Notes: generated by a model from the sequence alone, not told the origin. Counted from the stretch's first letter, positions 4,989 through 38,224 are shown. The stretch is 64,000 nt of DNA from IMGVR_UViG_3300036853_000446:343635-407634; one strand, 5' to 3'. Numbers and translations: made by a program.

Positions 4989-4995
4989 CGGTGTA
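4989..4995 (+). promoter_or_regulatory. CGGTGTA motif, 10 nt before ATG 5006
   Basis: Exact heptamer; same positional relation at ten genes. Confidence 0.6.
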
Positions 4996-5005
4996 TGCCG
5001 AGCCC

Positions 5006-5479
5006 ATGATCGATCTCGCGGTCTTCCACCGAAATCTATTGGGCCTCGACCCAAAGAGAACCCCCGTCGAATTCCGTCTCACCAAAACACATGAACGCCT
5101 CTACGCGGCAAGCCGCGAGTCAGCCCGCCACGGATTTCTCCTCCCTTCAAACCGAAACCTCGAGAGTTGGGAGCACTTTCTGGGGACCTTCGTCTTGGCG
5201 TACGGCCAAACTCCGATTGGCTCCGTGACCTTTGCCGTGAGCGCGCCCGTCCGCCGGTGGGCGAATGAACAGCTCAAGAAGGTCGCGCACCACATCTTTT
5301 CGTCACGCGCCAAGGCGTCGAGAGCGAGCATTGACGACCTCTTCTCGAAGTTTCAACGACTCGAAATCGGGTCGAGCGTCCTGCAGATGGCAGAGCCCGA
5401 GCGATGGGTCGCGTATGGGTTCACCGACGAGGACATCCTAACCCCTTGGATGCGCAACCGACTCCTCATTGCAGCATGA
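5006..5479 (+). CDS. hypothetical protein
   Basis: ATG 10 nt after the CGGTGTA motif; ATGA overlap with the next gene. Confidence 0.6.
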   Translation: MIDLAVFHRNLLGLDPKRTPVEFRLTKTHERLYAASRESARHGFLLPSNRNLESWEHFLGTFVLAYGQTPIGSVTFAVSAPVRRWANEQLKKVAHHIFSSRAKASRASIDDLFSKFQRLEIGSSVLQMAEPERWVAYGFTDEDILTPWMRNRLLIAA

Positions 5480-6075
5480 ATGTGACCCTTCCTCTGAACC
5501 CTAAAGACCTCTGTGTCGCCCTCGACCGAGAGGCCCCCGCCCACCTGACACTTGCTCCTTTCGACCTCGACGACGTCAGAGCCACACTTCGCCGTCGCCG
5601 TCCTCTACTGCTCCTCGAGTCGAATTCGGGGGCAATGGTCGACGTCGTGGAAGCGCTGCGGCCACATATCGAGATCTTCATCGACAGCCTGGTCCGCGTC
5701 GCCGATCTCGTGATCGGCGATGATTTACAGCAGGTTCTCGATCTCGGTCTTTATAATCCGCGGCTCGGCGTCCTGTTCGAGACCCTGTGGGCTGCGCGAT
5801 TCGAGCACCTCGAGCATCGGGATTTCTCAGCCCCTTTCCTCGAGCTGACGAAGACGACATTCGACGATCCGTCTGCCCTGATTCGCAATGACGCGCTCCT
5901 CTTCTGGTTAACCCTCCTCCGGCAAAACGATGCCACGACCACGAGACAGGTCATTCTCGTCATCAGGAGCCCTGGCGGTCTGGACCCCGCGATGTGCGCC
6001 TTCGTTCGTGCGGCCGAGCATTGGATATCGCTCGGCTCTCCCGTCCGCATCGTCACGGAGGCGACCGTCAGTTGA
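5476..6075 (+). CDS. hypothetical protein
   Basis: Start overlaps the previous stop (ATGA); Leu-rich globular composition. Confidence 0.6.
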   Translation: MNVTLPLNPKDLCVALDREAPAHLTLAPFDLDDVRATLRRRRPLLLLESNSGAMVDVVEALRPHIEIFIDSLVRVADLVIGDDLQQVLDLGLYNPRLGVLFETLWAARFEHLEHRDFSAPFLELTKTTFDDPSALIRNDALLFWLTLLRQNDATTTRQVILVIRSPGGLDPAMCAFVRAAEHWISLGSPVRIVTEATVS

Positions 6076-6556
6076 GCACCTTCGAAGGGTCGGGAGGTAG
6101 CTCCGGCGTCTCGAACTCGTTCGGAATCCCGGCCTTCCGCAGGGCATGCGCGCGACCCAGCTCGATCAGCTTATACGCAGCATTATGAAGGGCCTTGTCC
6201 GCTTTGGAGGCTTCGAGCCGCGCTTGGACGGCCTGCGCCGTCCCGACCATCTCGTTCATCCTCTGCGCGGCGACTTGATTCGCCATGTCGGCGTAGCCCG
6301 CCTGGAGCAGGGCCTGCTCCCACTCGAGAAACAGCTCCCGCGCCTCATGAACCGGGTGCTCCGCCGTCCCTAAGACTTCCACCTGAGCCCGACGCCGCGC
6401 GAGTGCGTCCCAAAACACAGCGGCGGCCTCGTCGGGCGTATAGTCCGGCCCATAGATCAGCCTGCCGTCCGGTTTTATCGTCACGAGCACTCGAGACGCC
6501 GACGTGCCGATGACCAAATCCTTCTCCGAAGGTGAATCGTCTCGTGAATCGCCCAT
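6068..6556 (-). CDS. hypothetical protein
   Basis: 162-aa ORF, helical composition, fills the gap between plus-strand genes. Confidence 0.55.
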   Translation of the reverse strand: MGDSRDDSPSEKDLVIGTSASRVLVTIKPDGRLIYGPDYTPDEAAAVFWDALARRRAQVEVLGTAEHPVHEARELFLEWEQALLQAGYADMANQVAAQRMNEMVGTAQAVQARLEASKADKALHNAAYKLIELGRAHALRKAGIPNEFETPELPPDPSKVLN

Positions 6557-6708
6557 AAAATCCGCGCCAGTCCGATGGTCGCCCCATTCTAGCGCGCTAC
6601 CGAAGTTTACGGCAAGCTGCCTTCGGGTTGCGGCGGTCCGCGCGCATCACCAAGGTCACACCGAGTTGCTCCCGACTCTTTAGGGAGTCACTCTTTATAG
6701 TAACCCAA

Positions 6709-6915
6709 ATGAAGTGGATGTTGCTCGCGCTCTTGGCCCTCGGAACTCCCTCTCGAGAGTCACACTGTTTCCATAACTGCTCGCAATGCGCCTTCCGGTG
6801 TAAACGCGCGAGTGACCCTGAAACGTGTCGCCAAACTTGCTTCGAACTCAAACGCGAGTGTTGCCAAAGTTGCAAGTCAGGACCAGGACCTCAAAAGACC
6901 TGCGCCTGCACATAA
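6709..6915 (+). CDS. small putatively secreted cysteine-rich peptide
   Basis: MKWMLLALLALG hydrophobic leader followed by 11 Cys in about 50 aa. Confidence 0.55.
   Translation: MKWMLLALLALGTPSRESHCFHNCSQCAFRCKRASDPETCRQTCFELKRECCQSCKSGPGPQKTCACT
6796..6802 (+). promoter_or_regulatory. CGGTGTA motif, 9 nt before rnhB start
   Basis: Exact heptamer. Confidence 0.6.
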
Positions 6916-7573
6916 ACAGAAGGCCAACGCTCTCCTCGAGAAATCCACTGCGGAGTGGATCCTCGGCTCGGACGAGGCCGGTTATGGTACACTCGCGGGC
7001 AGTCTGGTCGTCGTCGCCATGGCGGTCCGTCGATCGTGGGGCGATCCTGAGGTTACCGATTCAAAGGTGCTTTCTGACACAAAACGTCGGAGCATCGTGC
7101 GACGCTACCGTGGGGCTGAGGACGTCTTCAGGGTCGTCCACACGACGTCTCCTCGAGGGATCGATGAGGTGGGTGTTTGGACCTCACTGATCAACGCTCA
7201 CAATCAGGTGCATGAAGCTTTAGAAGCCAAACTGCGAGCCGTAGACCCATGGGGCGAGCTGCTTCACATCGTGGATGGTCTGGAGAACGCGCGAAGACGC
7301 CTCGACGCCCGTTTCACCCCACTATCCTCGGCGGACCTCTATGTTCCGGCCGTCTCGCTGGCGAGTTGCTTCGCCAAAGTCGTTCAATGTGAGTTGATGG
7401 ATCTTGCTGCGAAAAGCTACCCAGGATATGGCTTCGAGAGGCACCGCGGCTACGATACGCCGCAGCATCGAGAGGCGCTCGCGCGACTCGGGGTCACTCC
7501 GATCCACCGCAAGAGTTACCGGACTATCCGGGACCTGCTGAGCGCCGATGGCTTCTCTGCTGATCGTGGATGA
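6812..7573 (+). CDS. rnhB: ribonuclease HII
   Basis: GSDEAGYG, DSK, IVDG, HRGYDT...H motifs of RNase HII. Confidence 0.88.
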   Translation: MTLKRVAKLASNSNASVAKVASQDQDLKRPAPAHKQKANALLEKSTAEWILGSDEAGYGTLAGSLVVVAMAVRRSWGDPEVTDSKVLSDTKRRSIVRRYRGAEDVFRVVHTTSPRGIDEVGVWTSLINAHNQVHEALEAKLRAVDPWGELLHIVDGLENARRRLDARFTPLSSADLYVPAVSLASCFAKVVQCELMDLAAKSYPGYGFERHRGYDTPQHREALARLGVTPIHRKSYRTIRDLLSADGFSADRG

Positions 7574-7949
7574 TGACCTCATGGTCCAACGCGCTCTGAT
7601 ACGTGCCCTTCGCGAACACATCTGCGTTGCAGCTTGCAACGGCTGCGAGGCCCTCCGATTGCTCGGCGTCCAGCCCTTTGACCTCGTCATCTCGGACGTC
7701 GACATGCCCGTGATGAATGGCCTCGACTTCTACAGGAAGGCCCGCGAGCTTTTCCCGAACCTTCGGATCATTTTCCGGACGGGATCCAAAGTACCGGGAC
7801 TTGCGTCGATCGGGGTCCCGGTCCTACCAAAGGACTGGCCTTTGACCGACACGCTCGAGGCGATCGATTCTTTCGTAACGCGCGGTGTAACGCACATGGA
7901 TGCCGGCACTCTTCAAGGCAAAGCCCTTTCTGAAATGGGCGGGCGGTAA
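7548..7949 (+). CDS. single-domain response regulator (CheY-like receiver)
   Basis: LIVDDD, LVISDVDMPVMNG (phosphoacceptor Asp), IFRTG, LPK. Confidence 0.88.
   Translation: MASLLIVDDDLMVQRALIRALREHICVAACNGCEALRLLGVQPFDLVISDVDMPVMNGLDFYRKARELFPNLRIIFRTGSKVPGLASIGVPVLPKDWPLTDTLEAIDSFVTRGVTHMDAGTLQGKALSEMGGR
7883..7889 (+). promoter_or_regulatory. CGGTGTA motif, 10 nt before dam start
   Basis: Exact heptamer. Confidence 0.6.
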
Positions 7950-8766
7950 GACTCGTCTCCTCGAGACGCTATCGAATCTTCTCCCCGAGACGATCGACAC
8001 CTACTACGAGCCCTTCATCGGCGGCGGGGCTTTGTTCTTTCACCTCGCACACGAGCAGCGCTTTCGGCACGCGATCCTCAACGATTTCAATCCCGAACTG
8101 GTCAACTGCTACCAAGTCGTCCGCGACGCAGTGGAGGCCCTCATCGCGCAGCTAAAGACATTCCAGGTGACCCGCGACGAGTTTTACGCCGTGCGCGCGC
8201 TCGACCCTCTCGCGCTGTCTACCGTCCACCGGGCTGCCCGCACGATCTATCTGAATCGCACGTGTTTCAACGGCCTGTATCGGCTGAACAAGCGCGGCGC
8301 ATTCAACGTGCCGCGGGGCGATTACAAGGATCCTCGCGTTGTCGATGAGGGCAACCTCCACGCTTGCTCTGCTCTGCTTCATTCGGTGACGCTGCGCGAG
8401 GGCGGTTTCGTTCAGGCCGTAAAAGGGGTCGTCAGCGGGGACGCCGTCTATTTCGATCCCCCCTACGTGCCGCTCAACGCAACCAGCAATTTCAAGAGCT
8501 ACACGAAGGAGGGCTTCACGTTGGACGACCAGCAGCGGCTCGCCGAATGCTTTCGAGAGCTGGCGGATCGCGGCGTCTTCGTTCTCGAATCGAACTCGGA
8601 CACGGCCACCGTCCATAACCTCTACAAGGGTTTCGAGAGACGGGTCGTTCGGATGCGCCGCAACATCAACAGCAAGGCCGACAGTCGAGGCGCCGTCAAC
8701 GAGTTGGTCGTCATGGTCCGACCCGGCGGTGGCGAAGAATGGGATCACCGTGGCTATCAATCCTAA
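7900..8766 (+). CDS. dam: DNA adenine methyltransferase (Dam/D12 class)
   Basis: KPFLKWAGGK, YYEPFIGGGA, YLNRTCFNG, YFDPPY. Confidence 0.92.
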   Translation: MPALFKAKPFLKWAGGKTRLLETLSNLLPETIDTYYEPFIGGGALFFHLAHEQRFRHAILNDFNPELVNCYQVVRDAVEALIAQLKTFQVTRDEFYAVRALDPLALSTVHRAARTIYLNRTCFNGLYRLNKRGAFNVPRGDYKDPRVVDEGNLHACSALLHSVTLREGGFVQAVKGVVSGDAVYFDPPYVPLNATSNFKSYTKEGFTLDDQQRLAECFRELADRGVFVLESNSDTATVHNLYKGFERRVVRMRRNINSKADSRGAVNELVVMVRPGGGEEWDHRGYQS

Positions 8767-9031
8767 GGACTGGCTCGGAAGGGATCGGCGACTGCACCGA
8801 ACCCTCGTAATTGCCCTCATCGTCGTGCTGGCCACCCTTCGTGATACGTTCTGGCGAGACGCTCTCACTTATGTGGGTCTGGTCCTGATCGGTATTCACG
8901 CGGAATTCCGCCATGCTGCCTTACGGCATCTGATCGCCAGTCGCCCTTTCGACGATTTCGTCAGAGCCTACCGTCCTCGAGGACGAGATGGGCGGGATGC
9001 CAACCCGCCCGAACCTCGCATCTACAGTTAG
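8750..9031 (+). CDS. small membrane protein
   Basis: Two hydrophobic stretches (TLVIALIVVLATL; ALTYVGLVLIGI); overlaps the Dam 3' end. Confidence 0.45.
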   Translation: MAINPKDWLGRDRRLHRTLVIALIVVLATLRDTFWRDALTYVGLVLIGIHAEFRHAALRHLIASRPFDDFVRAYRPRGRDGRDANPPEPRIYS

Positions 9032-9269
9032 CGCAGAGCAGCGTGCAACGGTCGAGAGCGGGTTGGATTTGCTCCCAACTCGAGGAGGACGAGATGTAGA
9101 AAGCGCGGTCGCGGGTGTCGGCGAAATGGAAATGCAGCGCCGCCGGACAGCGACAGTAGCCACAGATCTGGCAACGCCCGCCCTTGTACGCGAGGGCCCT
9201 TTCCTTGAGTCTGAGGTGCCGCCGGTGGGCTCGGAAGCGACGCTGCCACCGCTCATCGAGTTCGCCCAT
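8961..9269 (-). CDS. HNH-endonuclease-like Zn-finger protein with degenerate catalytic His positions
   Basis: YKGGRCQICGY...ALHFHF...LDRCTLLCANC; CGGTGTA motif 10 nt upstream. Confidence 0.75.
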   Translation of the reverse strand: MGELDERWQRRFRAHRRHLRLKERALAYKGGRCQICGYCRCPAALHFHFADTRDRAFYISSSSSWEQIQPALDRCTLLCANCRCEVRAGWHPAHLVLEDGRL

Positions 9270-9279: not shown

Positions 9280-9286
9280 TACACCG
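9280..9286 (-). promoter_or_regulatory. CGGTGTA motif, 10 nt before HNH-like start
   Basis: Exact heptamer in a 20-nt intergenic gap. Confidence 0.6.
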
Positions 9287-13812: not shown

Positions 13813-15105
13813 ATGAGCCTCTCGGAGTCACCGTCGAACAATCTACCGGTCGCCATCTATCATGCCTTCGACCTGCCATTCACCGAGGTCGAAAGTCTCG
13901 TGGAAGTCATTGCAAAGCAGGGTTACTCTCACGTTCAGATCCCGCCCGCTCAGAAGTCGAACGACGCGGGCGGCGCGTGGTACGAGCGCTATCAGCCCGT
14001 TGACTACACCGTGATCGAGGGACGAGGGAGCGAAGCCGAACTCGAGAGTCTGACCAAGGCGGCCCATGCCTGCGGCCTGCGAGTGATCGCCGATGTCGTT
14101 TTCAACCAAATGGCCAACAGCCCGCCTTACTACGATAAGGAAACGGGCAAGCTCGATTTCCCCGGCTTGACTCCAGAGGACTTTCATCCCAAGAAGGACA
14201 TCGATTACGGGAACCCAGACCTGATCAGAGACGGTTGGCTCAACGGCGATTTGCCGGACCTGGACCATACCCGACCCGCCGTGCAGCGGCTTCAGAAGGG
14301 GCACCTCGCCAAGTTGCTCGCGCTCGGCATCGACGGCTTCCGGTTTGACGCCGCCAAGCACATGGCGATGAGCACCCTGCAAGACTATCTCGAATTCATC
14401 AACGTCGAGACCAACAACGAGGCCTGGAATTACCTCGAGGTCATCGAGGGCGATGGCATCTCGGGAGATAGCTACCAAAGCATCGCTGCCGTTACCGATT
14501 TTCGTCTCTACCATGCCGTCCGCGATGCCTTTTCCTTTGGAGGAGACCTAAAGAATTTGCGCATGCCACGCGGACTCGACGACTCGCGCAGCGTCCTTTT
14601 TGGCATGAATCACGACACCGATACGAACAATACCGAAGGCCTCAACGAGATGGCTTACGCCGAACGAAGTGATTCGCTGCTCGCAACGGCCTACGTGCTG
14701 GCCCGCGAGAACGGGGTCCCCCTCGTGCTCCATAGTGACAATCAGGTCGACTATATCCAGGCCGGCGCGAAGTTCCGGCAGATCATGCGAGCGAAATCGG
14801 GCGAAGGTCTATCCGTCACGGAGAATGTGCTCGGGATCGTCGAGGGAGACACGATACTCGTCATGGAACGGGGGACCGAAGGACTCTTCATCGTCAACAA
14901 GGCCGCAGAGACCTTCGATATTTCGAAGCTCGACGTGACGTTTACTCACCTCGGTGGGCGCTACCGCGAGCTGCGCCACGGCTTTACGATGGACATCGAA
15001 CGGAAAGACGATCGGAAGGCCATCGTCAACTGGGGCGATACGAATCGAGATGGCCTGTACATCAAGGGAAGGGATGCCCTCTATTTCGTCCGCGCCGCTT
15101 CATAG
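13813..15105 (+). CDS. GH13 alpha-amylase, no signal peptide
   Basis: Conserved regions DVVFNQ, GFRFDAAKH (nucleophile), YLEVI (acid/base), MNHDT; WYERYQPVDY. Confidence 0.9.
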   Translation: MSLSESPSNNLPVAIYHAFDLPFTEVESLVEVIAKQGYSHVQIPPAQKSNDAGGAWYERYQPVDYTVIEGRGSEAELESLTKAAHACGLRVIADVVFNQMANSPPYYDKETGKLDFPGLTPEDFHPKKDIDYGNPDLIRDGWLNGDLPDLDHTRPAVQRLQKGHLAKLLALGIDGFRFDAAKHMAMSTLQDYLEFINVETNNEAWNYLEVIEGDGISGDSYQSIAAVTDFRLYHAVRDAFSFGGDLKNLRMPRGLDDSRSVLFGMNHDTDTNNTEGLNEMAYAERSDSLLATAYVLARENGVPLVLHSDNQVDYIQAGAKFRQIMRAKSGEGLSVTENVLGIVEGDTILVMERGTEGLFIVNKAAETFDISKLDVTFTHLGGRYRELRHGFTMDIERKDDRKAIVNWGDTNRDGLYIKGRDALYFVRAAS

Positions 15106-16040
15106 GCAGAGATGACCAGCTGGAGCATCTTGTACGGGTTCGGAGAGTCGAGGGTCATCGGCACATTGAATCCCGCAGCTTTCGTGTGCCCCCCTCCCCC
15201 GTGAGCAAGGGCCAAACTGCCGCAGTCATACGAACCCCGCGAGCGCGAACTGCAGAGGAGCTTGAAGCCGCCCTCTTCATGGGCGATGTCGTACGCCACG
15301 ACCAGGTCGATCTTTGCCCCCATCGCCTCGGCCACGTCGCTCGACCATTTCACGCCCTGAAACAGGGCGACCCGAGTACCCACGGGGCTCGTCCAGTGGT
15401 AGGCTCTCTCGGTAATCTTGGCGACCGTCTTGAGCTTCTTGGCCCAGAGATGCCCGCCAAGGCTGAGTTCGCTTCGCCAAAAAGCGGGCCCGTCCTTCAG
15501 CAAGTGCTCGAGGGGCCAGAACCTCAAGGCCTCGGCCATCTCACAGGCTTTATTCCAATCCGGGTCCCCCGTTTGCCACGTGTCACGGATGCCGCTCAAT
15601 CGGGCGAACTCGCGGACAATGAGGGGCTCGGCGTCGAGCAGCTCCGCTGACCCCTTCAGCGGCCTCCAGACGTGCTCGTAGGCGAGCACGGCACCGCAGA
15701 CCCCAGGGTCCTTGTCCTCGTCCCCAAAGACCCCGAGGCCCGCCTGGACGAACGCCTGAACGCTACTCCCCTTCTTGTGATGGTCGAGAACGATGGTTCC
15801 CGCGTCGATGAAGGCCTGCGCCCTCTCTTCCGGGGGGCTGAAATCCACGAACATCATGCCCGGCACAGCCTCGAGGTTCGATTTCTCAGTGGTACCGTGG
15901 TCAATGACCCGGATTTCGGGGCGACCCGCGCCGTAGGCGTCGGCCACGATCATGGCGGATGCGACGCCGTCTGGGCAACTGTTGCCGTGGCTGATGACGA
16001 GTTTGATGTTCCGAAGTTGCTCGAGCGTGAAATATCCCAT
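15081..16040 (-). CDS. DHH/DHHA1 family phosphoesterase
   Basis: SHGNSCPDG, FVDFS, LDHH, GGGGHTKAAG. Confidence 0.88.
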   Translation of the reverse strand: MGYFTLEQLRNIKLVISHGNSCPDGVASAMIVADAYGAGRPEIRVIDHGTTEKSNLEAVPGMMFVDFSPPEERAQAFIDAGTIVLDHHKKGSSVQAFVQAGLGVFGDEDKDPGVCGAVLAYEHVWRPLKGSAELLDAEPLIVREFARLSGIRDTWQTGDPDWNKACEMAEALRFWPLEHLLKDGPAFWRSELSLGGHLWAKKLKTVAKITERAYHWTSPVGTRVALFQGVKWSSDVAEAMGAKIDLVVAYDIAHEEGGFKLLCSSRSRGSYDCGSLALAHGGGGHTKAAGFNVPMTLDSPNPYKMLQLVISAYEAARTK

Positions 16041-16050: not shown

Positions 16051-16057
16051 TACACCG
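16051..16057 (-). promoter_or_regulatory. CGGTGTA motif, 10 nt before DHH start
   Basis: Exact heptamer, intergenic. Confidence 0.6.
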
Positions 16058-21809: not shown

Positions 21810-21816
21810 TACACCG
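21810..21816 (-). promoter_or_regulatory. CGGTGTA motif, 13 nt before DUF1848-like start
   Basis: Exact heptamer, intergenic. Confidence 0.6.
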
Positions 21817-23637: not shown

Positions 23638-23644
23638 TACACCG
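23638..23644 (-). promoter_or_regulatory. CGGTGTA motif, 13 nt before clpX start
   Basis: Exact heptamer, intergenic. Confidence 0.6.
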
Positions 23645-24648: not shown

Positions 24649-25020
24649 TCAACTCGGAAACTGCCGCGTCCAGAACTTGTTGGCCGTCCCCCGCCAGCGG
24701 CGGTTGTAACCGGGCAATCTGGCTGCCTGGACGTTCACGATCGGAATTGCCCCCTCGGTCGTCTTCGAGACCAAGAGGTAACCGGCCTGGCTCGGCAGGA
24801 TGAGAGCGCGGGCTTCCTCTTGAAAGAACGGGAGGAGCGCCTCGAGTCGCGGACAGTCCGTCTTGAACCGAACAAATGTCGTCGCCCCAACGCTCAGCGG
24901 CCCATAGGGTTCGAGGAAGTCGAACTTTAGGCCGATGGCGTTGGCGTACTTAAAGAATGTCTGGATCCCGTGAACCTCTCGCTCGCCGGCTTTGATCTCG
25001 ACGGCGGCAAAATGGCTCAT
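24649..25020 (-). CDS. hypothetical protein
   Basis: TGATG overlap with the upstream gene; MSHFAAVEIK start. Confidence 0.5.
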   Translation of the reverse strand: MSHFAAVEIKAGEREVHGIQTFFKYANAIGLKFDFLEPYGPLSVGATTFVRFKTDCPRLEALLPFFQEEARALILPSQAGYLLVSKTTEGAIPIVNVQAARLPGYNRRWRGTANKFWTRQFPS

Positions 25021-25220
25021 CAGACGAGGCCCTCTTTTGCCGCGAGCCAATACGGCAGCGAGATGTCTCCGTCTTCTCCTACCTTGCCCAGCGAGCCGCA
25101 GTAGGCTCGGGGCACCCAAACCTCGTCGCCCGTATCGAACCTGCAAAGGAGAGCGCTCTCCGTTGCAGCGACGACTGTCTTGACGGTCATGTCTACGTCT
25201 TCTTCGTCATCATGTGCCAT
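25020..25220 (-). CDS. small phage-type hypothetical protein
   Basis: TESALL...EVWVPR...SLPYWLAAKEGL; GGAGGG SD. Confidence 0.6.
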   Translation of the reverse strand: MAHDDEEDVDMTVKTVVAATESALLCRFDTGDEVWVPRAYCGSLGKVGEDGDISLPYWLAAKEGLV

Positions 25221-25262: not shown

Positions 25263-25523
25263 TCAAACGGGCTCTACACCGGAGGGCCTGGCCCTCTCGT
25301 ATCGAACGAGCGAACCGATCTTCTCGACGATTTTTACGACGAGATTCTCCATAAAGAGGTCTTCGAGCAGCCGTTCGGCGTCCTCGAGACTCCACAATGC
25401 GCCGCACGCGAGGGCCACCTCACCCACCAACATCGGGCGGCACTGCTTCTCCATCAGCTCGAGCGCCAGCGCTTTGGCTTCGTCCCGAGTGGCTCGGCGC
25501 TCTTTACGTTCCCAATCGCTCAT
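25263..25523 (-). CDS. small HTH-like hypothetical protein
   Basis: 86-aa ORF coupled to neighbours. Confidence 0.45.
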   Translation of the reverse strand: MSDWERKERRATRDEAKALALELMEKQCRPMLVGEVALACGALWSLEDAERLLEDLFMENLVVKIVEKIGSLVRYERARPSGVEPV

Positions 25524-25773: not shown

Positions 25774-26967
25774 TCAGGATGGCTCGACCGAAGATGCCCG
25801 CGCGATCCCGACAATCGACAGGACCTGGACCTTACGGAGGTCGACGTAGATCGTGTAGGGGACGGTCGCGGTGACCTCCCAGCGATCGGACAGTTCTCTG
25901 GTTTGTACTCCAAAGTTACTCGAGACAGAGAGCGACCCGACACAGCCGCTCATCCCGATGGTATCGGCACTTTCCACCGGAAAGACCTTCGTCTTGGCAG
26001 AACCGAGCAGCGAGAAAATGTCGGGGTCGCTCACCCAGAGTTCCTGCGACGCAAACAGCTGGTCCCTCACGCAATCCACGTTGAGCGGCACGATAGACCC
26101 GGCTTGTTCCTTAGCGCGGAAGCTCAATTGCCGGGCGATATCCCTGACCCATGCCTGGGGCGCGACGCTACGCAACGCCCCGAGCCGATTGTATCCCAGG
26201 TTGATCGTCCTCATGTCCTGGATGCCGAGGACTGACCGGGAACGGGCGACGCCCTCGATACGGACGAGGCAGGTCGTGTCGGTCGATACCTCGCGGGTGA
26301 AGCGCCTCAGAAACATACCGGCGGTGCCACCGGCGCGCCACAGCAGCTCGGACGGGTCATCCTCGGACAGCTCCTTGGCAAGGCTCGTCCGCCCAGCCCT
26401 CGACGCCACCCGCAAGCGACCATCCCCCTCGTCCCGCAAGAGATCCGTCTGATGGGAGCGCGCGACCAGGCTCGAGACGGTGTCCCCTTCCCGCGCGCGC
26501 TCGTGCCGACCGGTGACCAGTGCGGTCTCCAAGGCGGGGCTCAGCCGCGGAAGCGCTTGCCCCATGATTCCCGACTCTCTCGGAAGGACGCCGGGATCGT
26601 GGAGGTCACCCTCGGCCACGACCAATTGAACCCGTCCCGTCTCCTTGTCGACGAGAAACACGCCCTCCTCGAGGGGCGCGCCCGGGAGGCACGCGAGCTG
26701 GTGGTATTCGTCGGCCAGGTATTGGCAAGCGTCGGCGACCTCGTCGAACGAGTGCCCGTCAGCCCGAACGAACACGCGGGTGACCAGCATGTCTCGAAGC
26801 CACTCCACGGATTTATGCTCGGCCTTGAACTGCACGAACAGCGCCCGAAGGTCAGTGTCCCGCTGGAGCACGCCTCGAACAAAGAGCAACAACGGTGCCA
26901 CCGGGTTGGCAGTGGACCGAACCAGGACCGTCGGCGCCTCGCGGCCCTGGACGACGAGAAGGCTCAC
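25774..26967 (-). CDS. hypothetical protein
   Basis: 397-aa ORF, GTGA-coupled to the AAA ATPase. Confidence 0.65.
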   Translation of the reverse strand: MSLLVVQGREAPTVLVRSTANPVAPLLLFVRGVLQRDTDLRALFVQFKAEHKSVEWLRDMLVTRVFVRADGHSFDEVADACQYLADEYHQLACLPGAPLEEGVFLVDKETGRVQLVVAEGDLHDPGVLPRESGIMGQALPRLSPALETALVTGRHERAREGDTVSSLVARSHQTDLLRDEGDGRLRVASRAGRTSLAKELSEDDPSELLWRAGGTAGMFLRRFTREVSTDTTCLVRIEGVARSRSVLGIQDMRTINLGYNRLGALRSVAPQAWVRDIARQLSFRAKEQAGSIVPLNVDCVRDQLFASQELWVSDPDIFSLLGSAKTKVFPVESADTIGMSGCVGSLSVSSNFGVQTRELSDRWEVTATVPYTIYVDLRKVQVLSIVGIARASSVEPS

Positions 26968-28583
26968 TCCAACCCGCCCTCGAGTAGCCGCGTCGTATTG
27001 CTGCTCTTCTTGGTGCTCGCGTAGCGTGCCCGCAACCCGTCACGAGAATCCTCATCGTAACCGACCCAGTTGATGACCTCGCGCACCTCGGTGTCCATCG
27101 TCTTGAGGATCCGGGGCTTCGTGCGCAGCTCCCTCTCGAAGATCTCATAGTCGAGCCGAGGCTTCTTGCGGACAAACGACTGGCGAAGCGCGGCCTCGAC
27201 CGCCTGTGCCATCTCCCTCGGGACCATGTTCTCCGAAGCCTCGGCCAGCCGTCGGAGGTTGAATTCGGAGATCTGCCCTTCGCTGAGATTGCCGAGCGTG
27301 CTCAGATGGATCTTGAGGATGTCAACCCGATCGTCCTCCGAGGGCAAGTCGAAGAAGAATCGCTCGCTGATTCGATTCGTAAACTCGACGGGCAGCGTCT
27401 TCAACGAGTTGGCGGTCAATGCCAAACAGACCTCGGCGCTCGTCTCCTGATGCCACGTGGACAGGATGCCGAGCGAACGCGCCGTCGTGCCCGCATCCGA
27501 GAATGAACTCGAGTGGGCCCCGCTGAACGACTTCTCCGCCTCGTCGACCATCGCGATGCAAGGCGACATGGCCTCGAGATAGCGGGTGACACGATACGTA
27601 TTGGCTTCGGTGTTGCCGACGCCAGAGTCACGAAGTTTGCCGAGTTCGAGCTGGATGAGCTGCACCCCCCAAGCTCGACTCAATGCCTTGACGGAGAGGG
27701 ATTTGCCGCAGCCCCAGACGCCGATACACAGCACACCCTTCGGCGGTCGAAGACCGAATGCCTTGCCCGCCGCCGTCCACGAGTGCCGAGTCTCCTCAGC
27801 CCAAGCCTTGAAGCGATCGACACCCCCGACGCGCTCGAAGCTCTCCTCAGAGGTATCGATCAGCTTGAGCAAGTCGGTCTTTCGGATCCGCTCGCGCTTG
27901 TACTGGAGGATGCACTCCTTCGTGACGATGCCCCGCTTCTCGGGGTCAGGATCGTTCTTGGTAATGCCGATCGACTGCCCCGCGGCGCTCGTGACCTGAT
28001 AGGCGGTGAGGCCGCTAAACCACGTGTGAGCGTCCGCTGGCAGGGTACTTCTGACATTTTCGGAGAGTCCGTCGAGGACCTCCTGGATCTCTTCCCCGGT
28101 CAAGAGGTCGTCTCGAATGACGTGGACGTAGCTCGCGAGCTTTGGCGGGATCACGAGCGACGCCCCGATGAAATAGATGCACTTGACGATCTTGAGGTTG
28201 CTGTTGACCTGGTGAATGATGTTGAGGATGCGCCGCACGACGTCATCGTTCTGCAGGAACCGCTCGGGGTCTGTGATCAGGTAATAGTGCACGCGATCCT
28301 GCGTGTCCTCCATGAAGATTGACTCCAGGACCTTGATGATATTCGCGTGGTGCTCATCACGAGCGAGCGAGCGTTGCTTCAGGTTGACCTGATACTGCTC
28401 GACCGGGATGAGACCGAACGCCGCGTTGAACACCTTGACGGAAACGCTGGGGGCCCCCTTCTTGGAGGCCTTTCTCTTGACGAACGAGTTGGCGATCGAG
28501 TTGATGACCCTGTCCTCTTCTTCGGTCACGACGTAGTTGACATACGTCATGCACTTCAAGTTTCGCTTCAAATCAGGATGCAT
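26964..28583 (-). CDS. Ycf46-like AAA+ ATPase
   Basis: Degenerate N-terminal AAA domain; C-terminal GVLCIGVWGCGKS, VDEAEK, TANS, FFFDLPS. Confidence 0.85.
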   Translation of the reverse strand: MHPDLKRNLKCMTYVNYVVTEEEDRVINSIANSFVKRKASKKGAPSVSVKVFNAAFGLIPVEQYQVNLKQRSLARDEHHANIIKVLESIFMEDTQDRVHYYLITDPERFLQNDDVVRRILNIIHQVNSNLKIVKCIYFIGASLVIPPKLASYVHVIRDDLLTGEEIQEVLDGLSENVRSTLPADAHTWFSGLTAYQVTSAAGQSIGITKNDPDPEKRGIVTKECILQYKRERIRKTDLLKLIDTSEESFERVGGVDRFKAWAEETRHSWTAAGKAFGLRPPKGVLCIGVWGCGKSLSVKALSRAWGVQLIQLELGKLRDSGVGNTEANTYRVTRYLEAMSPCIAMVDEAEKSFSGAHSSSFSDAGTTARSLGILSTWHQETSAEVCLALTANSLKTLPVEFTNRISERFFFDLPSEDDRVDILKIHLSTLGNLSEGQISEFNLRRLAEASENMVPREMAQAVEAALRQSFVRKKPRLDYEIFERELRTKPRILKTMDTEVREVINWVGYDEDSRDGLRARYASTKKSSNTTRLLEGGLE

Positions 28584-28592: not shown

Positions 28593-28599
28593 TACACCG
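28593..28599 (-). promoter_or_regulatory. CGGTGTA motif, 9 nt before AAA ATPase start
   Basis: Exact heptamer, intergenic. Confidence 0.6.
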
Positions 28600-28983: not shown

Positions 28984-29169
28984 TCAGACGGATCCTTCAC
29001 TCATGTTCTCGTGAACCTCGTCGCAATCGGGGCCCGTGCGCTCGTCAGCCTCGATCGACATGCCCTGCACGAGGTGGTGCGAGACTTTGGTGCAGTGCTC
29101 GCCGTGCTCGCGGTCCAGGACCTCGTAAACCACTTTCCCGTCCGGCCTGATGTCGACTTGAATTCTCAT
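28984..29169 (-). CDS. DUF2997-like protein
   Basis: IQVDIRPDGKVVYEV...GEHC pattern; gene context. Confidence 0.7.
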   Translation of the reverse strand: MRIQVDIRPDGKVVYEVLDREHGEHCTKVSHHLVQGMSIEADERTGPDCDEVHENMSEGSV

Positions 29170-29213
29170 TTTATATCGCTTCCCTTCAGGTGACCTGCCA
29201 AGCCCTTACACCG

Positions 29214-35407: not shown

Positions 35408-36349
35408 TCATCGGCGATTCTTTGACTTTTGGTACCGGGACTTCGACTTTGGCGTGTCTATCGTGGGGACCCAGCCCCGCGCGGCAGTCTTCGGCTCACC
35501 ATCGTCAGATGCCTCTGACTCGTCAGATTCGGGGCCTTCCGCCGTGGCATCCTCCGCCGCGGTGTCTTCCGGAGCGGTGTCTTCCGGTCCGGGGACGGTC
35601 ACGCCATCCTCGTCTTCGTAGTACCCCGGCTCGACGGCTTCGAACGCAAAAAGGTGCATCTCCTCGAACGCAGACTCGACGAGCCGGACGACGTTGTCGT
35701 CACACGAGGCCATGTTGAGTGGCGCGAAAGTCTGATCGGGCGGCTCGACCAACCACGTCGCCTTGCCGAGGCCCAGGCGGAGCGATATGGCCTCCCGAAG
35801 GACATCGGCGGCGGCGCGGTTCGCATAGATGACGTGCCCGAGACGAATGACGACGAGGTCTGGACTCGAAAGCAGGTCCTCTAGCGAATTGCTGATCAAC
35901 AGCTCCCCGTCTTCCGACCGTTGTGAGGCCAAGCGGTTCTTGACGCTGGCCTTACCGAGGTAGACGTTCAGCAGCGTCATGTCCGTGACGATTCTCACGA
36001 AGAATCCGGGTTTCTTACTGCCGATGACCCACTTGAAATGGCCGAGGAACGTCCTCCAGTTCACCTGCCGGATGAACAGATCGTCCGTCGTCCGATCGAC
36101 ACCCCCGGTCGTTTGATAGAGTGGCGTCGACGCATAGTGCCGCACCTTCAAGAGTTGCGGGTCGATCCCCAACAGGCGTTGTCTCAACGAGATGACGCGC
36201 ATATTGGGGCAATCGACAGAAACCAGCTCTTCGCCGCGATGCATCAGAATTGCGCCGCCCGACGGGTATTTCAGCGTGTTTCTGCAGCCAGGCACCGGGG
36301 CCATCTTGCAGACCTTGCAAGTCTGCGGCGGATCGGAATCTGAGGGCAC
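35408..36349 (-). CDS. hypothetical protein, possible degenerate DnaC/IstB-like loader
   Basis: N-terminal CxxC; LEDLLSSPDLVVIRLG resembles a Walker-B region; lies directly upstream of dnaB. Confidence 0.45.
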   Translation of the reverse strand: MPSDSDPPQTCKVCKMAPVPGCRNTLKYPSGGAILMHRGEELVSVDCPNMRVISLRQRLLGIDPQLLKVRHYASTPLYQTTGGVDRTTDDLFIRQVNWRTFLGHFKWVIGSKKPGFFVRIVTDMTLLNVYLGKASVKNRLASQRSEDGELLISNSLEDLLSSPDLVVIRLGHVIYANRAAADVLREAISLRLGLGKATWLVEPPDQTFAPLNMASCDDNVVRLVESAFEEMHLFAFEAVEPGYYEDEDGVTVPGPEDTAPEDTAAEDATAEGPESDESEASDDGEPKTAARGWVPTIDTPKSKSRYQKSKNRR

Positions 36350-36358
36350 ACCACCCAA

Positions 36359-36365
36359 TACACCG
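36359..36365 (-). promoter_or_regulatory. CGGTGTA motif, 9 nt before GTG 36349
   Basis: Exact heptamer directly after the SNF2 stop. Confidence 0.55.
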
Positions 36366-38204
36366 CTACTCGGTGAGGGCATCTGCCTTGAGCGCACGCA
36401 GAACCTCGACGACGCTGACCGGACCACTCTTGAAATCGAGCGCGCCAACGGCGGCCTCGCCGATGACCTTGTCGATGAGGCTCTTCGCCTCCCGCAGCAG
36501 CGCGTACACGTGATGGTCGATCGTCTTGTTCTTCTTCAACGACGGGCGTTCTGCCATCAGGTGATACGTGACGACACCCTTGTGGGGGCTACCGATGCGG
36601 ATCATGCGCCCGAGGATCTGGACGTAATCCCCCCAAGTCCATGGCAGCTCGTAAAACACCATCGCCCGTGCCATTTGCAAGTTGATGCCGATTCCGCCAG
36701 CCGTCGTGATGAACACGACCCGGACGTCCGAGGTAATGTCCTGGAAGGTCTCTTGAGCCGAGGCACGCTGCTTGTCGTTCTGGGCTCCCGTGATCGCCAC
36801 GGTCTTGATTCGCTTTGACTCCAGAATCTTCTGGAGTCGCGGCACTAGACTCGCGAAGCGGGTGTAGACGATAACCTTTTCCCCTTCCAGCTCTCCGCCG
36901 TCAGAGACGAGATCGACTAAGGCCTGTTCTTTCGAGCCCAGGGCACCGACCTTGTGCGTCTTCATGTCGAGCGTGGCGAAATCCAAACCGCCCGTCACGT
37001 CCGATCCCGCCTCGAATTTGAGCATGCTGAGGGAATTGACGACCTGCTGGCAGTAGTTGAGGGCCACGAGCGTCTTGTGCTCCTCGTAGTCTTTGACGCT
37101 TCCGTCACCGAGTTCGATGATGCCCGTCAGCGCCTGAGCGTACTTGGCGTCCTCGGCAGCGTTCAGCTCGCAAACGAGGTCCTTCGAGATGAGCACGGGC
37201 AACTCGTCCGAGATATCCTGCTTGTTTCGACCGAGATAGAAGGGATCGATCTGACGTCGAAAACCGTCGAGGTTCTTGTATCCGACAATGATGGGTATCT
37301 TGCGTGCCGTGCCCGGGATCTTCTGCAACTCGGTGACGCAAAAATCCCTCATGAATGCCGTCTTCGTGGTGAAGACCCCCGGCTTGATGACCTTGTAAAT
37401 GCAGTAACCCTCGATGAGCTTGGATTTGAGAAGGGTTGCCGTCAGCCCATAGACGCGCTCTGCCCGGTCGCTGAGAAAGCGGGTGACCTCGGAGGTTTTG
37501 GTCTTATCGTTGGCAAACGCCTGGGCCTCGTCGAAGAAGACGACGAGCTTCGACCCGTTCCGGCTGGCGTCGAGCAGCACCTGGTCGAGAACGCCGGGAA
37601 CGACCGCCTTCGTTGGGTCTGGCTTGCCCTTGGCATCGACGGGTCGCACGCCCTCCGCATTCCAGTCGCGGAGCAGCAGGGCGTAGTTTAGCACCATGAC
37701 GACCCGTTCCCCGTCGGCCGCAGCCGGAGCCAGGAGCCAGTCCGCGTAGCTGGTCTTGCGCTGCGCGAGAGGCGACTCGCCGCCCTTCGTCGTCGCTGAC
37801 GTCTCCACGACGATCGGACGGATGCCCGTCGTGAACCGCAGGATCTCCCGCGCCCATTGCCGCACGGTCGATTTCGGGGTCACGATGACGACCTTGACCT
37901 CCGGGCTGCGCTCCATCATGTGGGAGAACGCCGCGATGGCTTCTAGGGTTTTCCCGGTGCCGGTCGCGTCCCCCAACACCATCCGCTGCAGCGCGAGCAG
38001 GTGGTAAGCCCCCTGCACCTGGTAGTATCGCAGGCTGAAGGGCTGCTCGATGCCGTCGAGGCCCTTGCAACGGTTGCGCATGAAGCGCGACGGCTTAAGC
38101 TCGACGGTCTTTGATTCGCGAACCTTCTTCAGAAGTTCGAGCGTCTTTTCGAGCTTCGCTTGCCGCACGGGGTCGATCGGCGGCGTCTTTTTTCGAGTGG
38201 CCAT
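36366..38204 (-). CDS. SNF2-family helicase
   Basis: LRYYQ, LGDATGTGKT, FDEAQ, LTAT, AGGIGINLQ, QILGRMIRIG. Confidence 0.92.
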   Translation of the reverse strand: MATRKKTPPIDPVRQAKLEKTLELLKKVRESKTVELKPSRFMRNRCKGLDGIEQPFSLRYYQVQGAYHLLALQRMVLGDATGTGKTLEAIAAFSHMMERSPEVKVVIVTPKSTVRQWAREILRFTTGIRPIVVETSATTKGGESPLAQRKTSYADWLLAPAAADGERVVMVLNYALLLRDWNAEGVRPVDAKGKPDPTKAVVPGVLDQVLLDASRNGSKLVVFFDEAQAFANDKTKTSEVTRFLSDRAERVYGLTATLLKSKLIEGYCIYKVIKPGVFTTKTAFMRDFCVTELQKIPGTARKIPIIVGYKNLDGFRRQIDPFYLGRNKQDISDELPVLISKDLVCELNAAEDAKYAQALTGIIELGDGSVKDYEEHKTLVALNYCQQVVNSLSMLKFEAGSDVTGGLDFATLDMKTHKVGALGSKEQALVDLVSDGGELEGEKVIVYTRFASLVPRLQKILESKRIKTVAITGAQNDKQRASAQETFQDITSDVRVVFITTAGGIGINLQMARAMVFYELPWTWGDYVQILGRMIRIGSPHKGVVTYHLMAERPSLKKNKTIDHHVYALLREAKSLIDKVIGEAAVGALDFKSGPVSVVEVLRALKADALTE

Positions 38205-38217
38205 TCAGGCCACGAGT

Positions 38218-38224
38218 TACACCG
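38218..38224 (-). promoter_or_regulatory. CGGTGTA motif, 13 nt before SNF2 start
   Basis: Exact heptamer, intergenic. Confidence 0.6.

What the first reader, a model, noticed from the sequence alone, without database searches (positions are those of the whole stretch)
4989..38224. CGGTGTA heptamer fixed 9-13 nt upstream of ten likely start codons: candidate phage-specific promoter giving near-leaderless mRNAs
Seen: exact CGGTGTA on the coding strand before 5006, rnhB, dam, the HNH-like gene, DHH, the DUF1848-like gene, clpX, the AAA ATPase, 36349 and SNF2 (spacers 10, 9, 10, 10, 10, 13, 13, 9, 9, 13). No SD lies in these spacers. Some starts (5006, 23624, 36349) were chosen downstream of the ORF-track starts. 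Three more copies have longer leaders (3441, 25275, 29207). The few other copies I noticed are intragenic (14005, 45904, 51051, 53131), and my scan was not exhaustive. None precedes a tail gene. Inference: a -10-like element for a phage-encoded sigma factor or RNAP that defines a middle regulon. An alternative is a non-canonical ribosome-binding signal, since GGTG can pair with the 16S tail.
Basis: seen in the sequence. Interest (0 to 1): 0.72.

Follow-up and report, generated by a model that had tools for sequence, protein, structure and literature searches.

The report
Huge-phage promoter for leaderless mRNAs
A seven-base signal, (C/T)GGTGTA, sits 9-13 bases before the start codon of about 70 genes in a 408-kb soil phage and its relatives. 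It is most likely a very compact promoter from which transcripts begin at, or a few bases before, the start codon, so these genes need no ribosome-binding site.

Summary
The window is the last 64 kb of a 407,634-bp IMG/VR phage contig from soil. CGGTGTA occurs 18 times in the window (3.4 expected) and 101 times in the genome. In 65 of the 101 copies an ATG or GTG that opens an ORF lies 9-13 nt downstream (about 5% expected). The same YGGTGTA-N9-10-ATG layout fills related huge phages of 235-529 kb.

Comparative evidence favours a -35-less, -10-like promoter that starts transcription about 10-11 nt after the motif:
- Copies with short spacers have no Shine-Dalgarno (SD). Copies with long spacers have a canonical SD that begins where the ATG would otherwise sit.
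- Five divergent gene pairs in a relative have 33-35-bp intergenic regions made only of two back-to-back motifs.
- C(-1)A(+1) is conserved at the ATG.
- 11 of 14 orthologues keep the motif at about 44% protein identity, and four of them switch to an SD leader.
- The motif is almost absent at tight operon junctions.

A second, bipartite (-35/-10) leaderless promoter class also exists. No phage RNA polymerase or canonical sigma factor was found, only a conserved protein with a sigma region-4 domain. No RNA data exist, so the transcription start sites are inferred.

The parts
4989..4995 (+). Class 1 motif CGGTGTA, 10 nt before ATG 5006 (157-aa ORF 5006-5479, no family match)
6796..6802 (+). Class 1 motif, 9 nt before GTG 6812 (RNase HII, 6812-7573)
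7883..7889 (+). Class 1 motif, 10 nt before ATG 7900 (Dam-type N6-adenine DNA methyltransferase, 7900-8766)
9280..9286 (-). Class 1 motif, 10 nt before ATG 9269 (HNH endonuclease, 8961-9269)
16051..16057 (-). Class 1 motif, 10 nt before ATG 16040 (DHH/DHHA1-like, 15081-16040)
21810..21816 (-). Class 1 motif, 13 nt before ATG 21796 (DUF1848, 20978-21796)
23638..23644 (-). Class 1 motif, 13 nt before ATG 23624 (ClpX-like, 22374-23624; zinc finger starts at residue 3 from this ATG)
28593..28599 (-). Class 1 motif, 9 nt before ATG 28583 (AAA ATPase, 26964-28583). The orthologue in relative G001 keeps the motif but has a 23-nt spacer with AGGAG.
36359..36365 (-). Class 1 motif, 9 nt before GTG 36349 (313-aa ORF 35408-36349, no family match)
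38218..38224 (-). Class 1 motif, 13 nt before ATG 38204 (SNF2 helicase, 36366-38204). Orthologues in relatives keep YGGTGTA at 5, 10, 11 or 62 nt from the ATG.
3441..3447 (+). Class 1 motif with a long leader: 89 nt before ATG 3537 (thymidylate kinase, 3537-4124)
25275..25281 (-). Class 1 motif with a 54-nt leader that holds GGAGGG 7 nt before ATG 25220 (66-aa ORF 25020-25220)
29207..29213 (-). Class 1 motif with a 37-nt leader that holds GAAGGGAAG before ATG 29169 (61-aa ORF 28984-29169)
49245..49271 (+). Class 2 bipartite promoter-like site (GATCA, 16 nt, CGTACT), 6 nt before ATG 49278 (188-aa ORF)
44075..44101 (+). Class 2 bipartite promoter-like site (GGATCAAA ... CGTACT), 36 nt before ATG 44138 (161-aa ORF)
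14005..14011 (-). Intragenic CGGTGTA with no coupled start. It is one of five such copies (14005-, 40843-, 45904+, 51051-, 53131+), a number consistent with chance.

Best explanation
YGGTGTA (YGGTGTAG in some relatives) is the core of a -35-independent, -10-like promoter used by a clade of huge soil phages.

Proposed mechanism (inferred):
- RNA polymerase, most likely the host core enzyme, melts the DNA at the TA of the motif (about -12/-11). The specificity could come from the host primary sigma, remodelled or not, or from an unidentified phage factor.
- Transcription starts about 10-11 nt after the motif's last A.
- In most copies that position is the A or G of the start codon, or 1-3 nt before it. 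The mRNA is therefore leaderless or nearly so, and is translated by 5'-terminal-AUG initiation without a Shine-Dalgarno sequence.
- In a minority of copies the same position is the first purine of a canonical Shine-Dalgarno sequence, or the start of a longer leader that contains one.

In this genome the motif heads about 70 leaderless-type units and about 10-16 leadered units. These are mostly DNA-metabolism and other non-structural genes.

Shown: the motif, its position, its enrichment and its conservation. Inferred: the promoter function, the start-site position, the temporal class and the factor.
For: 1. Enrichment and position. 65 of 101 CGGTGTA copies have ATG/GTG at 9-13 nt. Only C or T is tolerated at position 1. 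There is no conserved -35 region.

2. Two spacer classes.
- Short-spacer starts have SD-like words in 11-19% of cases, the same as random sequence. Copies with spacers of 15 nt or more have them in 69-74%.
- In relative G001, 8 of 18 long-leader copies have the SD core starting 9-13 nt after the motif, the place the ATG occupies in the short class. Control heptamers give a flat distribution (15 of 2996 sites).
- This points to one fixed functional position, the RNA 5' end.

3. Divergent pairs. Five divergent gene pairs in G001 have ATG-to-ATG gaps of only 33-35 bp. Each gap consists of two back-to-back motifs 1-3 nt apart, so both promoters must lie in that space.

4. Start-site context.
- In G001, C precedes the ATG in 24 of 27 sites (spacer 9) and 19 of 28 sites (spacer 10). 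This is the pyrimidine(-1)/purine(+1) start-site preference of bacterial RNA polymerase (established knowledge).
- Coupled start codons are ATG 54, GTG 11 and TTG 1 in G000, and 58, 5 and 2 in G001. These are purine-initiated, as leaderless mRNAs require.

5. Conservation. Among 122 reciprocal-best orthologue pairs (median 44% identity), 11 of 14 class 1 genes keep the motif in G001, against 12 of 102 other genes (Fisher P = 4.5e-7). Four of the eleven switch from the leaderless layout to a longer leader with an SD, so the motif works independently of its distance to the ATG.

6. Operon position. Coupled motifs are almost absent at overlapping or tight co-directional junctions (2 of 118 in G000, 5 of 176 in G001). 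They are common after gaps and at divergent gene heads. A ribosome-binding site would be expected inside operons.

7. Clade-wide layout. YGGTGTA-N9-10-ATG against the reversed-pattern control: 66 vs 4 (529-kb phage), 62 vs 1 (350 kb), 37 vs 0 (235 kb). An unrelated 236-kb phage gives 4 vs 4.

8. Geometry. The T of the TA lies 11-12 nt before the start codon at spacers 9-10. Known -10 boxes of leaderless bacterial genes sit at about 12 bp (PMC3160421).

9. A second class. The genome and G001 each carry a clearly bipartite -35/-10 class whose -10 hexamer lies exactly 6 nt before the ATG. Leaderless transcription units are therefore normal in these phages.
Against: - No transcription start site has been mapped, and no RNA run was listed for this genome.
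- The motif does not fit the sigma-70 -10 consensus beyond TA. T at -7 is absent (9% T), and the TG lies at -14/-13, not -15/-14.
- No phage sigma-2 domain or RNA polymerase was found, so the recognising factor is unknown.
- In relative G002 the 10-11-nt spacer is often AGAGGGGAT(C/T). This could be an SD at ideal spacing, which would imply a start site upstream of it.
- Spacers of 12-13 nt (13 of 74 sites in G000) imply 2-3-nt leaders, not strictly leaderless mRNAs.
- The host is unknown, so its ability to translate leaderless mRNAs cannot be checked.
Confidence: 0.78

Rival explanations
1. The motif lies in the mRNA and acts as a non-canonical ribosome-binding or translation-enhancer signal. 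It would pair with rRNA (GGUG with the CACC of the 16S 3' tail) or bind a ribosome-associated factor, positioning the 30S subunit 9-13 nt upstream of the AUG.
For: The distance to the start codon is fixed and the spacers lack an SD. GGUG is complementary to part of the 16S tail (established knowledge). Huge phages with few SD motifs have been reported (PMC7162821).
Against: - Only 4 nt could pair, and they lie 11-15 nt from the AUG. That is too far for pairing with that part of the tail (inference from the canonical SD alignment).
- About 15% of genes carry the motif, and almost none of these are inside operons.
- Long-spacer copies keep the motif and carry their own SD at the position of the ATG.
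- Orthologues swap between the two layouts.
- The 33-35-bp divergent intergenic regions leave no room for separate promoters.
- The conserved C at -1 has no known role in translation.
Confidence: 0.06
2. The motif is a promoter for a phage-encoded or otherwise non-sigma-70-type RNA polymerase that starts immediately after the motif, as T7-type promoters do. This would give 9-13-nt leaders without an SD.
For: - The motif is short and strand-specific, with no -35 region.
- In G002 the sequence after the motif is purine-rich and SD-like.
- The contig is estimated to be 86% complete, and very divergent polymerases can escape Pfam models.
Against: - No match was found to PF00940 or PF00562. The PF00940 search rang in none of the control genomes, so that negative is weak.
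- Single-subunit polymerase promoters are about 20 bp long; only 7-8 bp are conserved here.
- No SD begins earlier than 9 nt after the motif, with one exception, and no ATGs accumulate at spacers 14-17. Both would be expected if the RNA began right after the motif.
- C(-1)A(+1) is conserved at the ATG, not at the edge of the motif.
Confidence: 0.08
3. The motif is the binding site of a phage DNA-binding regulator. This could be a repressor operator, comparable to the oriented 'stoperators' of mycobacteriophage L5, or an activator site. It would overlap promoters without being the promoter element itself.
For: - The motif is an oriented, repeated short site spread over the genome.
- The phage encodes an integrase, and two relatives are classed as proviruses.
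- A conserved protein with two helix-turn-helix domains exists.
Against: - Stoperators have no fixed distance to start codons (own knowledge).
- Here the spacing is sharp (9-10 nt in G001), and the SD or ATG begins at one fixed offset.
- No other conserved promoter element accompanies the motif.
- The divergent 33-35-bp regions contain nothing else.
Confidence: 0.06
4. The motif is an RNA-processing signal. An endoribonuclease would cut polycistronic RNA at a fixed distance from it and so create leaderless mRNAs.
For: Leaderless mRNAs can be produced by cleavage in E. coli (MazF, own knowledge). The motif is strand-specific.
Against: - The motif stands at divergent gene heads, where no upstream co-directional transcript is expected.
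- It is depleted inside tight operons, where processing would be most useful.
- The C(-1)A(+1) context fits initiation.
Confidence: 0.02

Closest known systems
-10 boxes directly upstream of ORFs in leaderless ('TA-led') genes of Actinobacteria and Deinococcus-Thermus (PMC3160421; PMC12340547)
   Same: A TA-containing element lies about 11-12 bp before the start codon. There is no SD, and starts are AUG or GUG. The -10 element serves as both the transcription signal and, in effect, the translation-start signal.
   Different: - The consensus there is TANNNT, read by the primary sigma factor. Here the information lies upstream of the TA (YGGTG-TA), and T(-7) is missing.
- The element is phage-specific and clade-specific.
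- The host and the factor are unknown.
Extended -10 middle/late promoters of Thermus phage P23-45, with the sigma-4-displacing factor gp39 (PMC3950348; PMC7403470)
   Same: - A phage uses two promoter architectures: a -10/-35 class and a -35-less class whose extra contacts lie just upstream of the -10 element.
- A phage protein that acts on sigma region 4 could favour the -35-less class.
- Only host RNA polymerase is used.
   Different: - P23-45 promoters keep a full TATAAT-like hexamer with TG at -15/-14. Here only TA is kept, and TG abuts it.
- No gp39 homologue was sought or found.
- The candidate protein here contains a sigma-4-like domain rather than binding one.
T4 late promoters (TATAAATA at -10, no -35, read by gp55 with gp33 and the sliding clamp); own knowledge
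   Same: A single short -10-region element defines a large phage regulon without a -35 box.
   Different: - T4 late mRNAs have leaders with an SD.
- gp55 is a diverged sigma-2-type protein, and no such domain was detected here.
- The sequence is unrelated.
- The regulon here is non-structural, not late.
Shine-Dalgarno ribosome-binding sites
   Same: A short, strand-specific element at a preferred distance upstream of start codons.
   Different: - There is no GGAGG core.
- The distance is too long.
- The element is absent inside operons.
- It coexists with genuine SD sequences placed downstream of it.
Stoperators of mycobacteriophage L5 (own knowledge)
   Same: Many copies of a short asymmetric site, oriented with transcription, in short intergenic regions of a possibly temperate phage.
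   Different: Stoperators are 13 bp long, bind the repressor and have no fixed distance to the start codon. Here the spacing to the ATG or SD is fixed.

Membership tests
Leaderless ('TA-led') bacterial genes | TA-containing -10-like signal about 10-12 bp upstream of the translation start | tested here: met
   The T of the TA lies 11-12 nt before the start at the modal spacers 9-10. Reference geometry is in PMC3160421.
Leaderless ('TA-led') bacterial genes | No Shine-Dalgarno sequence between the signal and the start codon | tested here: met
   SD-like words occur in 11% (G000) and 19% (G001) of short-spacer sites, against 16-24% in random sequence and 69-74% in long-spacer copies.
Leaderless ('TA-led') bacterial genes | Transcription start coincides with, or lies within a few nt of, the start codon | not testable with these tools
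   No RNA run was listed. Indirect support comes from C(-1)A(+1) at the ATG and the SD-start offset of 9-13.
Sigma-70-type -10 / extended -10 promoter | T(-12)A(-11) ... T(-7) hexamer | tested here: not met
   TA is invariant, but the position equivalent to -7 is T in only 9% of sites, and the four bases after TA carry little information. In G001 only a G directly after TA is conserved.
Sigma-70-type -10 / extended -10 promoter | TG at -15/-14, one base upstream of the hexamer | tested here: not met
   The TG directly abuts the TA (GGTG-TA), which places it at -14/-13 if TA is -12/-11.
Sigma-70-type -10 / extended -10 promoter | No -35 element required | tested here: met
   Nothing is conserved from -45 to -2 relative to the motif in 74 sites. 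The divergent pairs leave no room for a -35 box outside the neighbouring gene.
Shine-Dalgarno ribosome-binding site | Complementarity to the CCUCC core of the 16S 3' tail at 5-10 nt from the start, and use inside operons as well | tested here: not met
   There is no GGAG or GAGG, and GGTG ends 11-15 nt from the start. The motif is present at 2 of 118 and 5 of 176 tight junctions.
Single-subunit (T7-like) or multisubunit phage RNA polymerase promoter | A cognate phage RNA polymerase gene in the genome | tested here: inconclusive
   No match to PF00940 or PF00562. However, PF00940 rang in no control genome, the contig is estimated to be 86% complete, and very divergent polymerases may be missed.
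Sigma-70 family factor (for the 238-aa protein at genome 107861-108577, minus strand) | Sigma-2 domain (regions 2.1-2.4) that reads the -10 element | tested here: not met
   Only one weak Sigma70_r2 match exists in the genome, in a different 76-aa ORF (E 0.03). The structure model matches only region-4 domains, with TM-score about 0.8 on the target.
Sigma-70 family factor (for the 238-aa protein) | Sigma-4 helix-turn-helix domain | tested here: met
   Sigma70_r4 E 2e-12 and Sigma70_r4_2 E 2.5e-11 at residues 60-111. A second, weaker region-4-like stretch lies near residues 167-193. PHROG 'RNA polymerase sigma factor' families match over residues 34-122 only.
Mycobacteriophage-type stoperator | Oriented repeated site bound by the phage repressor, with no fixed relation to start codons | tested here: not met
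   The spacing to the ATG is sharply fixed. Repressor binding cannot be tested with these tools.

The most novel reading that the evidence does not exclude
A large clade of huge soil phages (235-529 kb) runs most of its non-structural genes from a previously undescribed 7-8-bp, -35-less promoter. This promoter is read not by a canonical sigma factor but by host RNA polymerase reprogrammed by the clade's conserved two-HTH, sigma-4-only protein. Because transcripts start exactly at the AUG or at the SD, whole divergent promoter pairs fit in 33-35 bp. The switch from the bipartite class 2 promoters, whose -35 boxes contain GATC, to class 1 might be timed partly by the phage Dam methylase, which is itself a class 1 gene.
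Probability: 0.2. Interest if true: 0.8.

Novelty: new variant of a known kind. Interest (0 to 1): 0.6.

Why it matters
- Annotation. The motif gives a sequence-only handle on the transcription programme of uncultivated huge phages, for which no promoter classes are known. It corrects gene starts: 5006, 23624 and 36349 in this window lie downstream of the longest ORFs.
- Missing SD motifs. It offers one explanation for why some huge phages show few SD motifs (noted in PMC7162821). Part of their genes would be leaderless rather than using an unknown ribosome-binding site.
- Host range. It predicts that the unknown host translates leaderless mRNAs efficiently, which narrows the host candidates.
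- Parts. It provides a very small, portable promoter/5'-end module and a candidate polymerase-reprogramming protein for biochemical study.
- Contrast. The best-studied jumbo phage, phiKZ, showed no leaderless transcripts (PMC8244752).

Tried and rejected
- RNA evidence. One DNA holder (a soil metagenome, probably the source sample) and one weak holder were found. No RNA run was listed.
- Host identification. Megablast of 20 kb against GenBank phages found nothing. By protein, the nearest cultured relative is the Acidobacteriota jumbo phage Tunturi_5 (30% identity in SNF2). It lacks both the motif enrichment (5 vs 2) and the sigma-4 protein. A scan of GTDB genomes with the sigma-4 protein family hit MAG contigs labelled Parcubacteria, Lysinibacter, Methylobacter, Lentisphaeria and Shinella. 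These labels are mutually inconsistent and probably reflect mis-binned phage contigs. The host remains unknown.
- Factor search. Sigma70_r2, the RNA polymerase beta-type domain, T7-type polymerase and the S1 domain were all absent.
- tRNA test. I checked whether the motif precedes untranslated genes. Two copies abut tRNA 3' ends (genome 148119- and 159348-), but one lies 1 nt before tRNA-His and the other precedes a small ORF, so the test is uninformative.
- Third promoter class. A search for a late/structural class found only weak T-rich words (TCCTTTT) without fixed position, and was rejected.
- Standard signals. Sigma-70 consensus promoters and intrinsic terminators in window 20-39 kb are at chance level.
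- Literature. GGTGTA + promoter + phage gave no relevant paper. Berdygulova et al. 2011 (PMC3018760) is not held.
- Palindrome scan of IMG/VR. The back-to-back motif pair gave 118 sites, mostly chance hits in AT-rich phages. Only 7 have start codons on both sides; at least four of these are from G001 or its near-duplicate contig and one is from the 529-kb relative.
- Gene calls. My own gene caller is crude: it produces shadow ORFs and uncertain starts. Counts that depend on it are approximate.

Full report
CONTEXT. The window is the last 64 kb (343,635-407,634) of a single 407,634-bp IMG/VR virus contig. It is 60.5% G+C, classed as linear, and estimated by CheckV to be 86% complete. It carries 30 tRNA genes in one cluster. 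It was assembled from a soil metagenome. It is therefore a huge (jumbo) phage of unknown host.

OBSERVATION.
- CGGTGTA occurs 18 times in the window, against 3.4 expected.
- Genome-wide there are 101 copies, and CGGTGTA is the most over-represented heptamer under a Markov-5 background.
- ATG lies 9-13 nt downstream in 55 copies and GTG lies 9-11 nt downstream in 10 more. The base rate is about 5% per site, so P is about 1e-59. For the window alone, 10 of 18 gives P of 2e-9 to 2e-11.
- TGGTGTA is the only tolerated variant (8 of 15).
- A profile of 74 sites shows nothing conserved upstream (no -35 box) and little downstream.
The ClpX zinc finger starts at residue 3 when the protein is read from the motif-linked ATG, which supports the downstream choice of start.

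THE MOTIF IS A CLADE FEATURE. Relatives were found through the SNF2 protein (52% identity).
- A 312-kb relative (G001) was fetched whole. It has 167 YGGTGTA copies, 53 of them with ATG at spacer 9-10. There the motif extends to YGGTGTAG.
- Counts of YGGTGTA-N9-10-ATG against the reversed-pattern control are 66 vs 4 in a 529-kb phage, 62 vs 1 in a 350-kb phage and 37 vs 0 in a 235-kb contig. An unrelated 236-kb phage gives 4 vs 4.
- The distant Acidobacteriota phage Tunturi_5 and the 485-kb record LR745208.1 show no clear enrichment. LR745208.1 nevertheless keeps TGGTGTA-N10-ATG before its SNF2 orthologue.

PROMOTER OR RIBOSOME-BINDING SIGNAL? Six results bear on this.
1. Two spacer classes. 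Short-spacer starts carry SD-like words no more often than random sequence (11-19%). Motif copies 15 nt or more from the start carry them in 69-74% of cases. In G001 a tight group has spacers of 18-23 nt with a canonical (A)AGGAG whose first purine lies 9-13 nt after the motif. That is the position of the ATG's A in the short class. This holds for 8 of 18 long-leader copies, against 15 of 2996 control-heptamer sites. One fixed position downstream of the motif is thus where the functional RNA element begins. That is what a transcription start site would produce, and what a ribosome-bound signal could not.
2. Divergent pairs. Five divergent gene pairs in G001 have ATG-to-ATG distances of 33-35 bp, consisting only of two back-to-back motifs 1-3 nt apart, each 9-10 nt from its ATG. 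Both genes need promoters, and there is no other DNA there.
3. Start-site context. C precedes the ATG in 24 of 27 and 19 of 28 G001 sites. C(-1)A(+1) is the preferred start-site context of bacterial RNA polymerase (established knowledge). Coupled starts are almost all ATG or GTG.
4. Conservation. In 122 orthologue pairs at a median 44% identity, 11 of 14 class 1 genes keep the motif, against 12 of 102 others (P = 4.5e-7). Four orthologues, including the AAA ATPase and SNF2 of this window, switch from the leaderless layout to a longer leader with an SD while keeping the motif.
5. Operon position. The motif is nearly absent where genes overlap or abut (2 of 118 and 5 of 176) and frequent after gaps and at divergent heads.
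6. Geometry. With spacers of 9-10, the T of the TA lies 11-12 nt before the start codon. This is the geometry of -10 boxes in leaderless bacterial genes (PMC3160421).

I conclude that the motif is a -35-less, -10-like promoter core with initiation about 10-11 nt after its last A. This gives leaderless mRNAs (spacers 9-11), 1-3-nt leaders (spacers 12-13), or leaders that begin with or contain an SD.

A SECOND CLASS. While looking for other upstream words I found a bipartite element in this genome: GGATCAAA, about 11 nt, then CCGTACT. That is GATCA-N16-CGTAC, in about 30 copies, mostly at 209-325 kb plus two in the window. The ATG most often lies exactly 6 nt after CGTACT, with a range of 4-14 nt. 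G001 lacks this element but has its own: GTTGATCC, about 11 nt, GGCATAC, then 7 nt to the ATG. That is a -35 box TTGATC and a -10 hexamer CATACT placed 6 nt before the ATG, again with C at -1. These are ordinary two-box promoters in a perfectly leaderless arrangement. They show independently that leaderless units are the rule in these phages.

Class 2 genes are mostly small proteins without family matches, plus a methyltransferase-helicase fusion and an integrase. Class 1 genes include a UvrD helicase, DNA methyltransferases, ThyX, ParB-like, RtcB, RNase HII, Dam, HNH, DHH, ClpX, an AAA ATPase and SNF2. An early (class 2) and middle (class 1) assignment is plausible but is inference only.

The tail module of the window (44.9-64 kb) and the long minus-strand block at 0-140 kb have few or no coupled motifs. 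Their genes often have leaders with SD words. I found no convincing third motif.

WHO READS IT? No phage RNA polymerase and no Sigma70_r2 domain were found. The one transcription-type candidate is a 238-aa protein (genome 107,861-108,577, minus strand).
- It has a sigma region-4 domain at residues 60-111 and a second, weaker HTH near 167-193.
- It belongs to a family of more than 500 metagenomic proteins, many on contigs of 230-490 kb.
- It sits in a conserved block after a clamp-loader gene and a 5'-3' exonuclease gene.
- It is present in G001 (46% identity), the 529-kb phage and the 350-kb phage, and absent from Tunturi_5.
- An AlphaFold model (pLDDT 79) matches only sigma-4 domains.

It is therefore not a canonical sigma factor, and its link to class 1 is a hypothesis. 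By analogy with Thermus phage P23-45, a factor that acts on sigma region 4 could shift host polymerase from -10/-35 promoters to -35-less ones (PMC3950348).

CAVEATS.
- Start sites are not mapped, because no RNA run was listed.
- The motif fails two defining features of sigma-70 -10 and extended -10 elements: there is no T(-7), and the TG is shifted by one base.
- In fragment G002 the spacer is usually AGAGGGGAT(C/T), which could be an SD and would then require a start site further upstream.
- The host is unknown.
- My gene calls are approximate.

COMPARISON AND NOVELTY. The mechanism resembles known leaderless -10-adjacent genes and phage -35-less promoter regulons (T4 late, P23-45 middle/late). 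The consensus, its clade and the extreme compaction are not in the literature I could search. phiKZ, the model jumbo phage, has no leaderless transcripts. I rate it a new variant of a known kind, with interest 0.6.

Noticed in passing
genome 209-325 kb (loci L041-L047); window 44075-44101 and 49245-49271: A second promoter class: GGATCAAA, about 11 nt, CCGTACT (GATCA-N16-CGTAC), then most often 6 nt to the ATG. There are about 30 copies, in front of mostly small unknown genes, a methyltransferase-SNF2 fusion and an integrase. Relative G001 instead has GTTGATCC ... GGCATAC plus 7 nt to the ATG (a sigma-70-like TTGATC / CATACT pair).
   Followed up: partly
class 2 -35 boxes; window 7900-8766: The -35-like boxes of class 2 in both phages contain GATC (GGATCAAA here; its near reverse complement TTGATCC in G001). 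The phage encodes a Dam-type GATC methyltransferase behind a class 1 motif, so methylation could modulate class 2 promoters.
   Followed up: no
genome 107861-108577 (-), locus L002:1114-1830: A 238-aa protein with a sigma region-4 domain plus a second HTH and no sigma-2 domain. Its family has more than 500 metagenomic members, many on contigs of 230-490 kb. It always follows a clamp-loader gene and a 5'-3' exonuclease gene in a conserved block.
   Followed up: partly
genome 323197-324045 (+), L047:197-1045: A tyrosine recombinase (Phage_integrase, E 1e-27) behind a class 2 promoter. IMG/VR classes relatives G001 and G005 as proviruses. These huge phages may be temperate.
   Followed up: no
relative G002 (IMGVR_UViG_3300008261_001864), e.g. 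1191-1210, 5479-5498, 8428-8447 (-): In this relative the 10-11-nt spacer between the motif and the ATG is usually AGAGGGGAT(C/T). This is either a G-rich discriminator or an SD at ideal spacing. It is not explained by the simple leaderless model.
   Followed up: no
genome 140-165 kb (-): A cluster of 30 tRNA genes, all on the minus strand. CGGTGTA copies abut the 3' ends of tRNA-Pro (148121) and tRNA-Ala (159350). The first lies 1 nt before tRNA-His.
   Followed up: partly
genome 106770-107798 (-), L002:23-1051: A 342-aa ORF made of three tandem repeats of about 110 aa (motifs such as TPEY..W..IK.RC and YGGRGI), preceded by a class 1 motif at spacer 9. It looks like a repeated DNA-binding or homing-endonuclease-associated domain.
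   Followed up: no
genome 141093 (-) and 214378 (+): Some motif copies sit directly after a G+C-rich hairpin, or within the loop of one (GGCGGAGGGGG...CCCCCTCCGC then CGGTGTA). These may be terminator-promoter junctions or regulatory structures.
   Followed up: no
whole genome: SD use is weak overall. SD-like words precede about 36% of the other gene starts, against 16% in random sequence. No S1-domain gene is present. Part of the 'missing SD' is explained by about 100 leaderless-type units.
   Followed up: partly
genome 84296 (-) and 136404 (-): A few class 1 motifs have a TTGATCC- or GATCCC-like box about 17-18 nt upstream, so they look like hybrids of the two classes.
   Followed up: no
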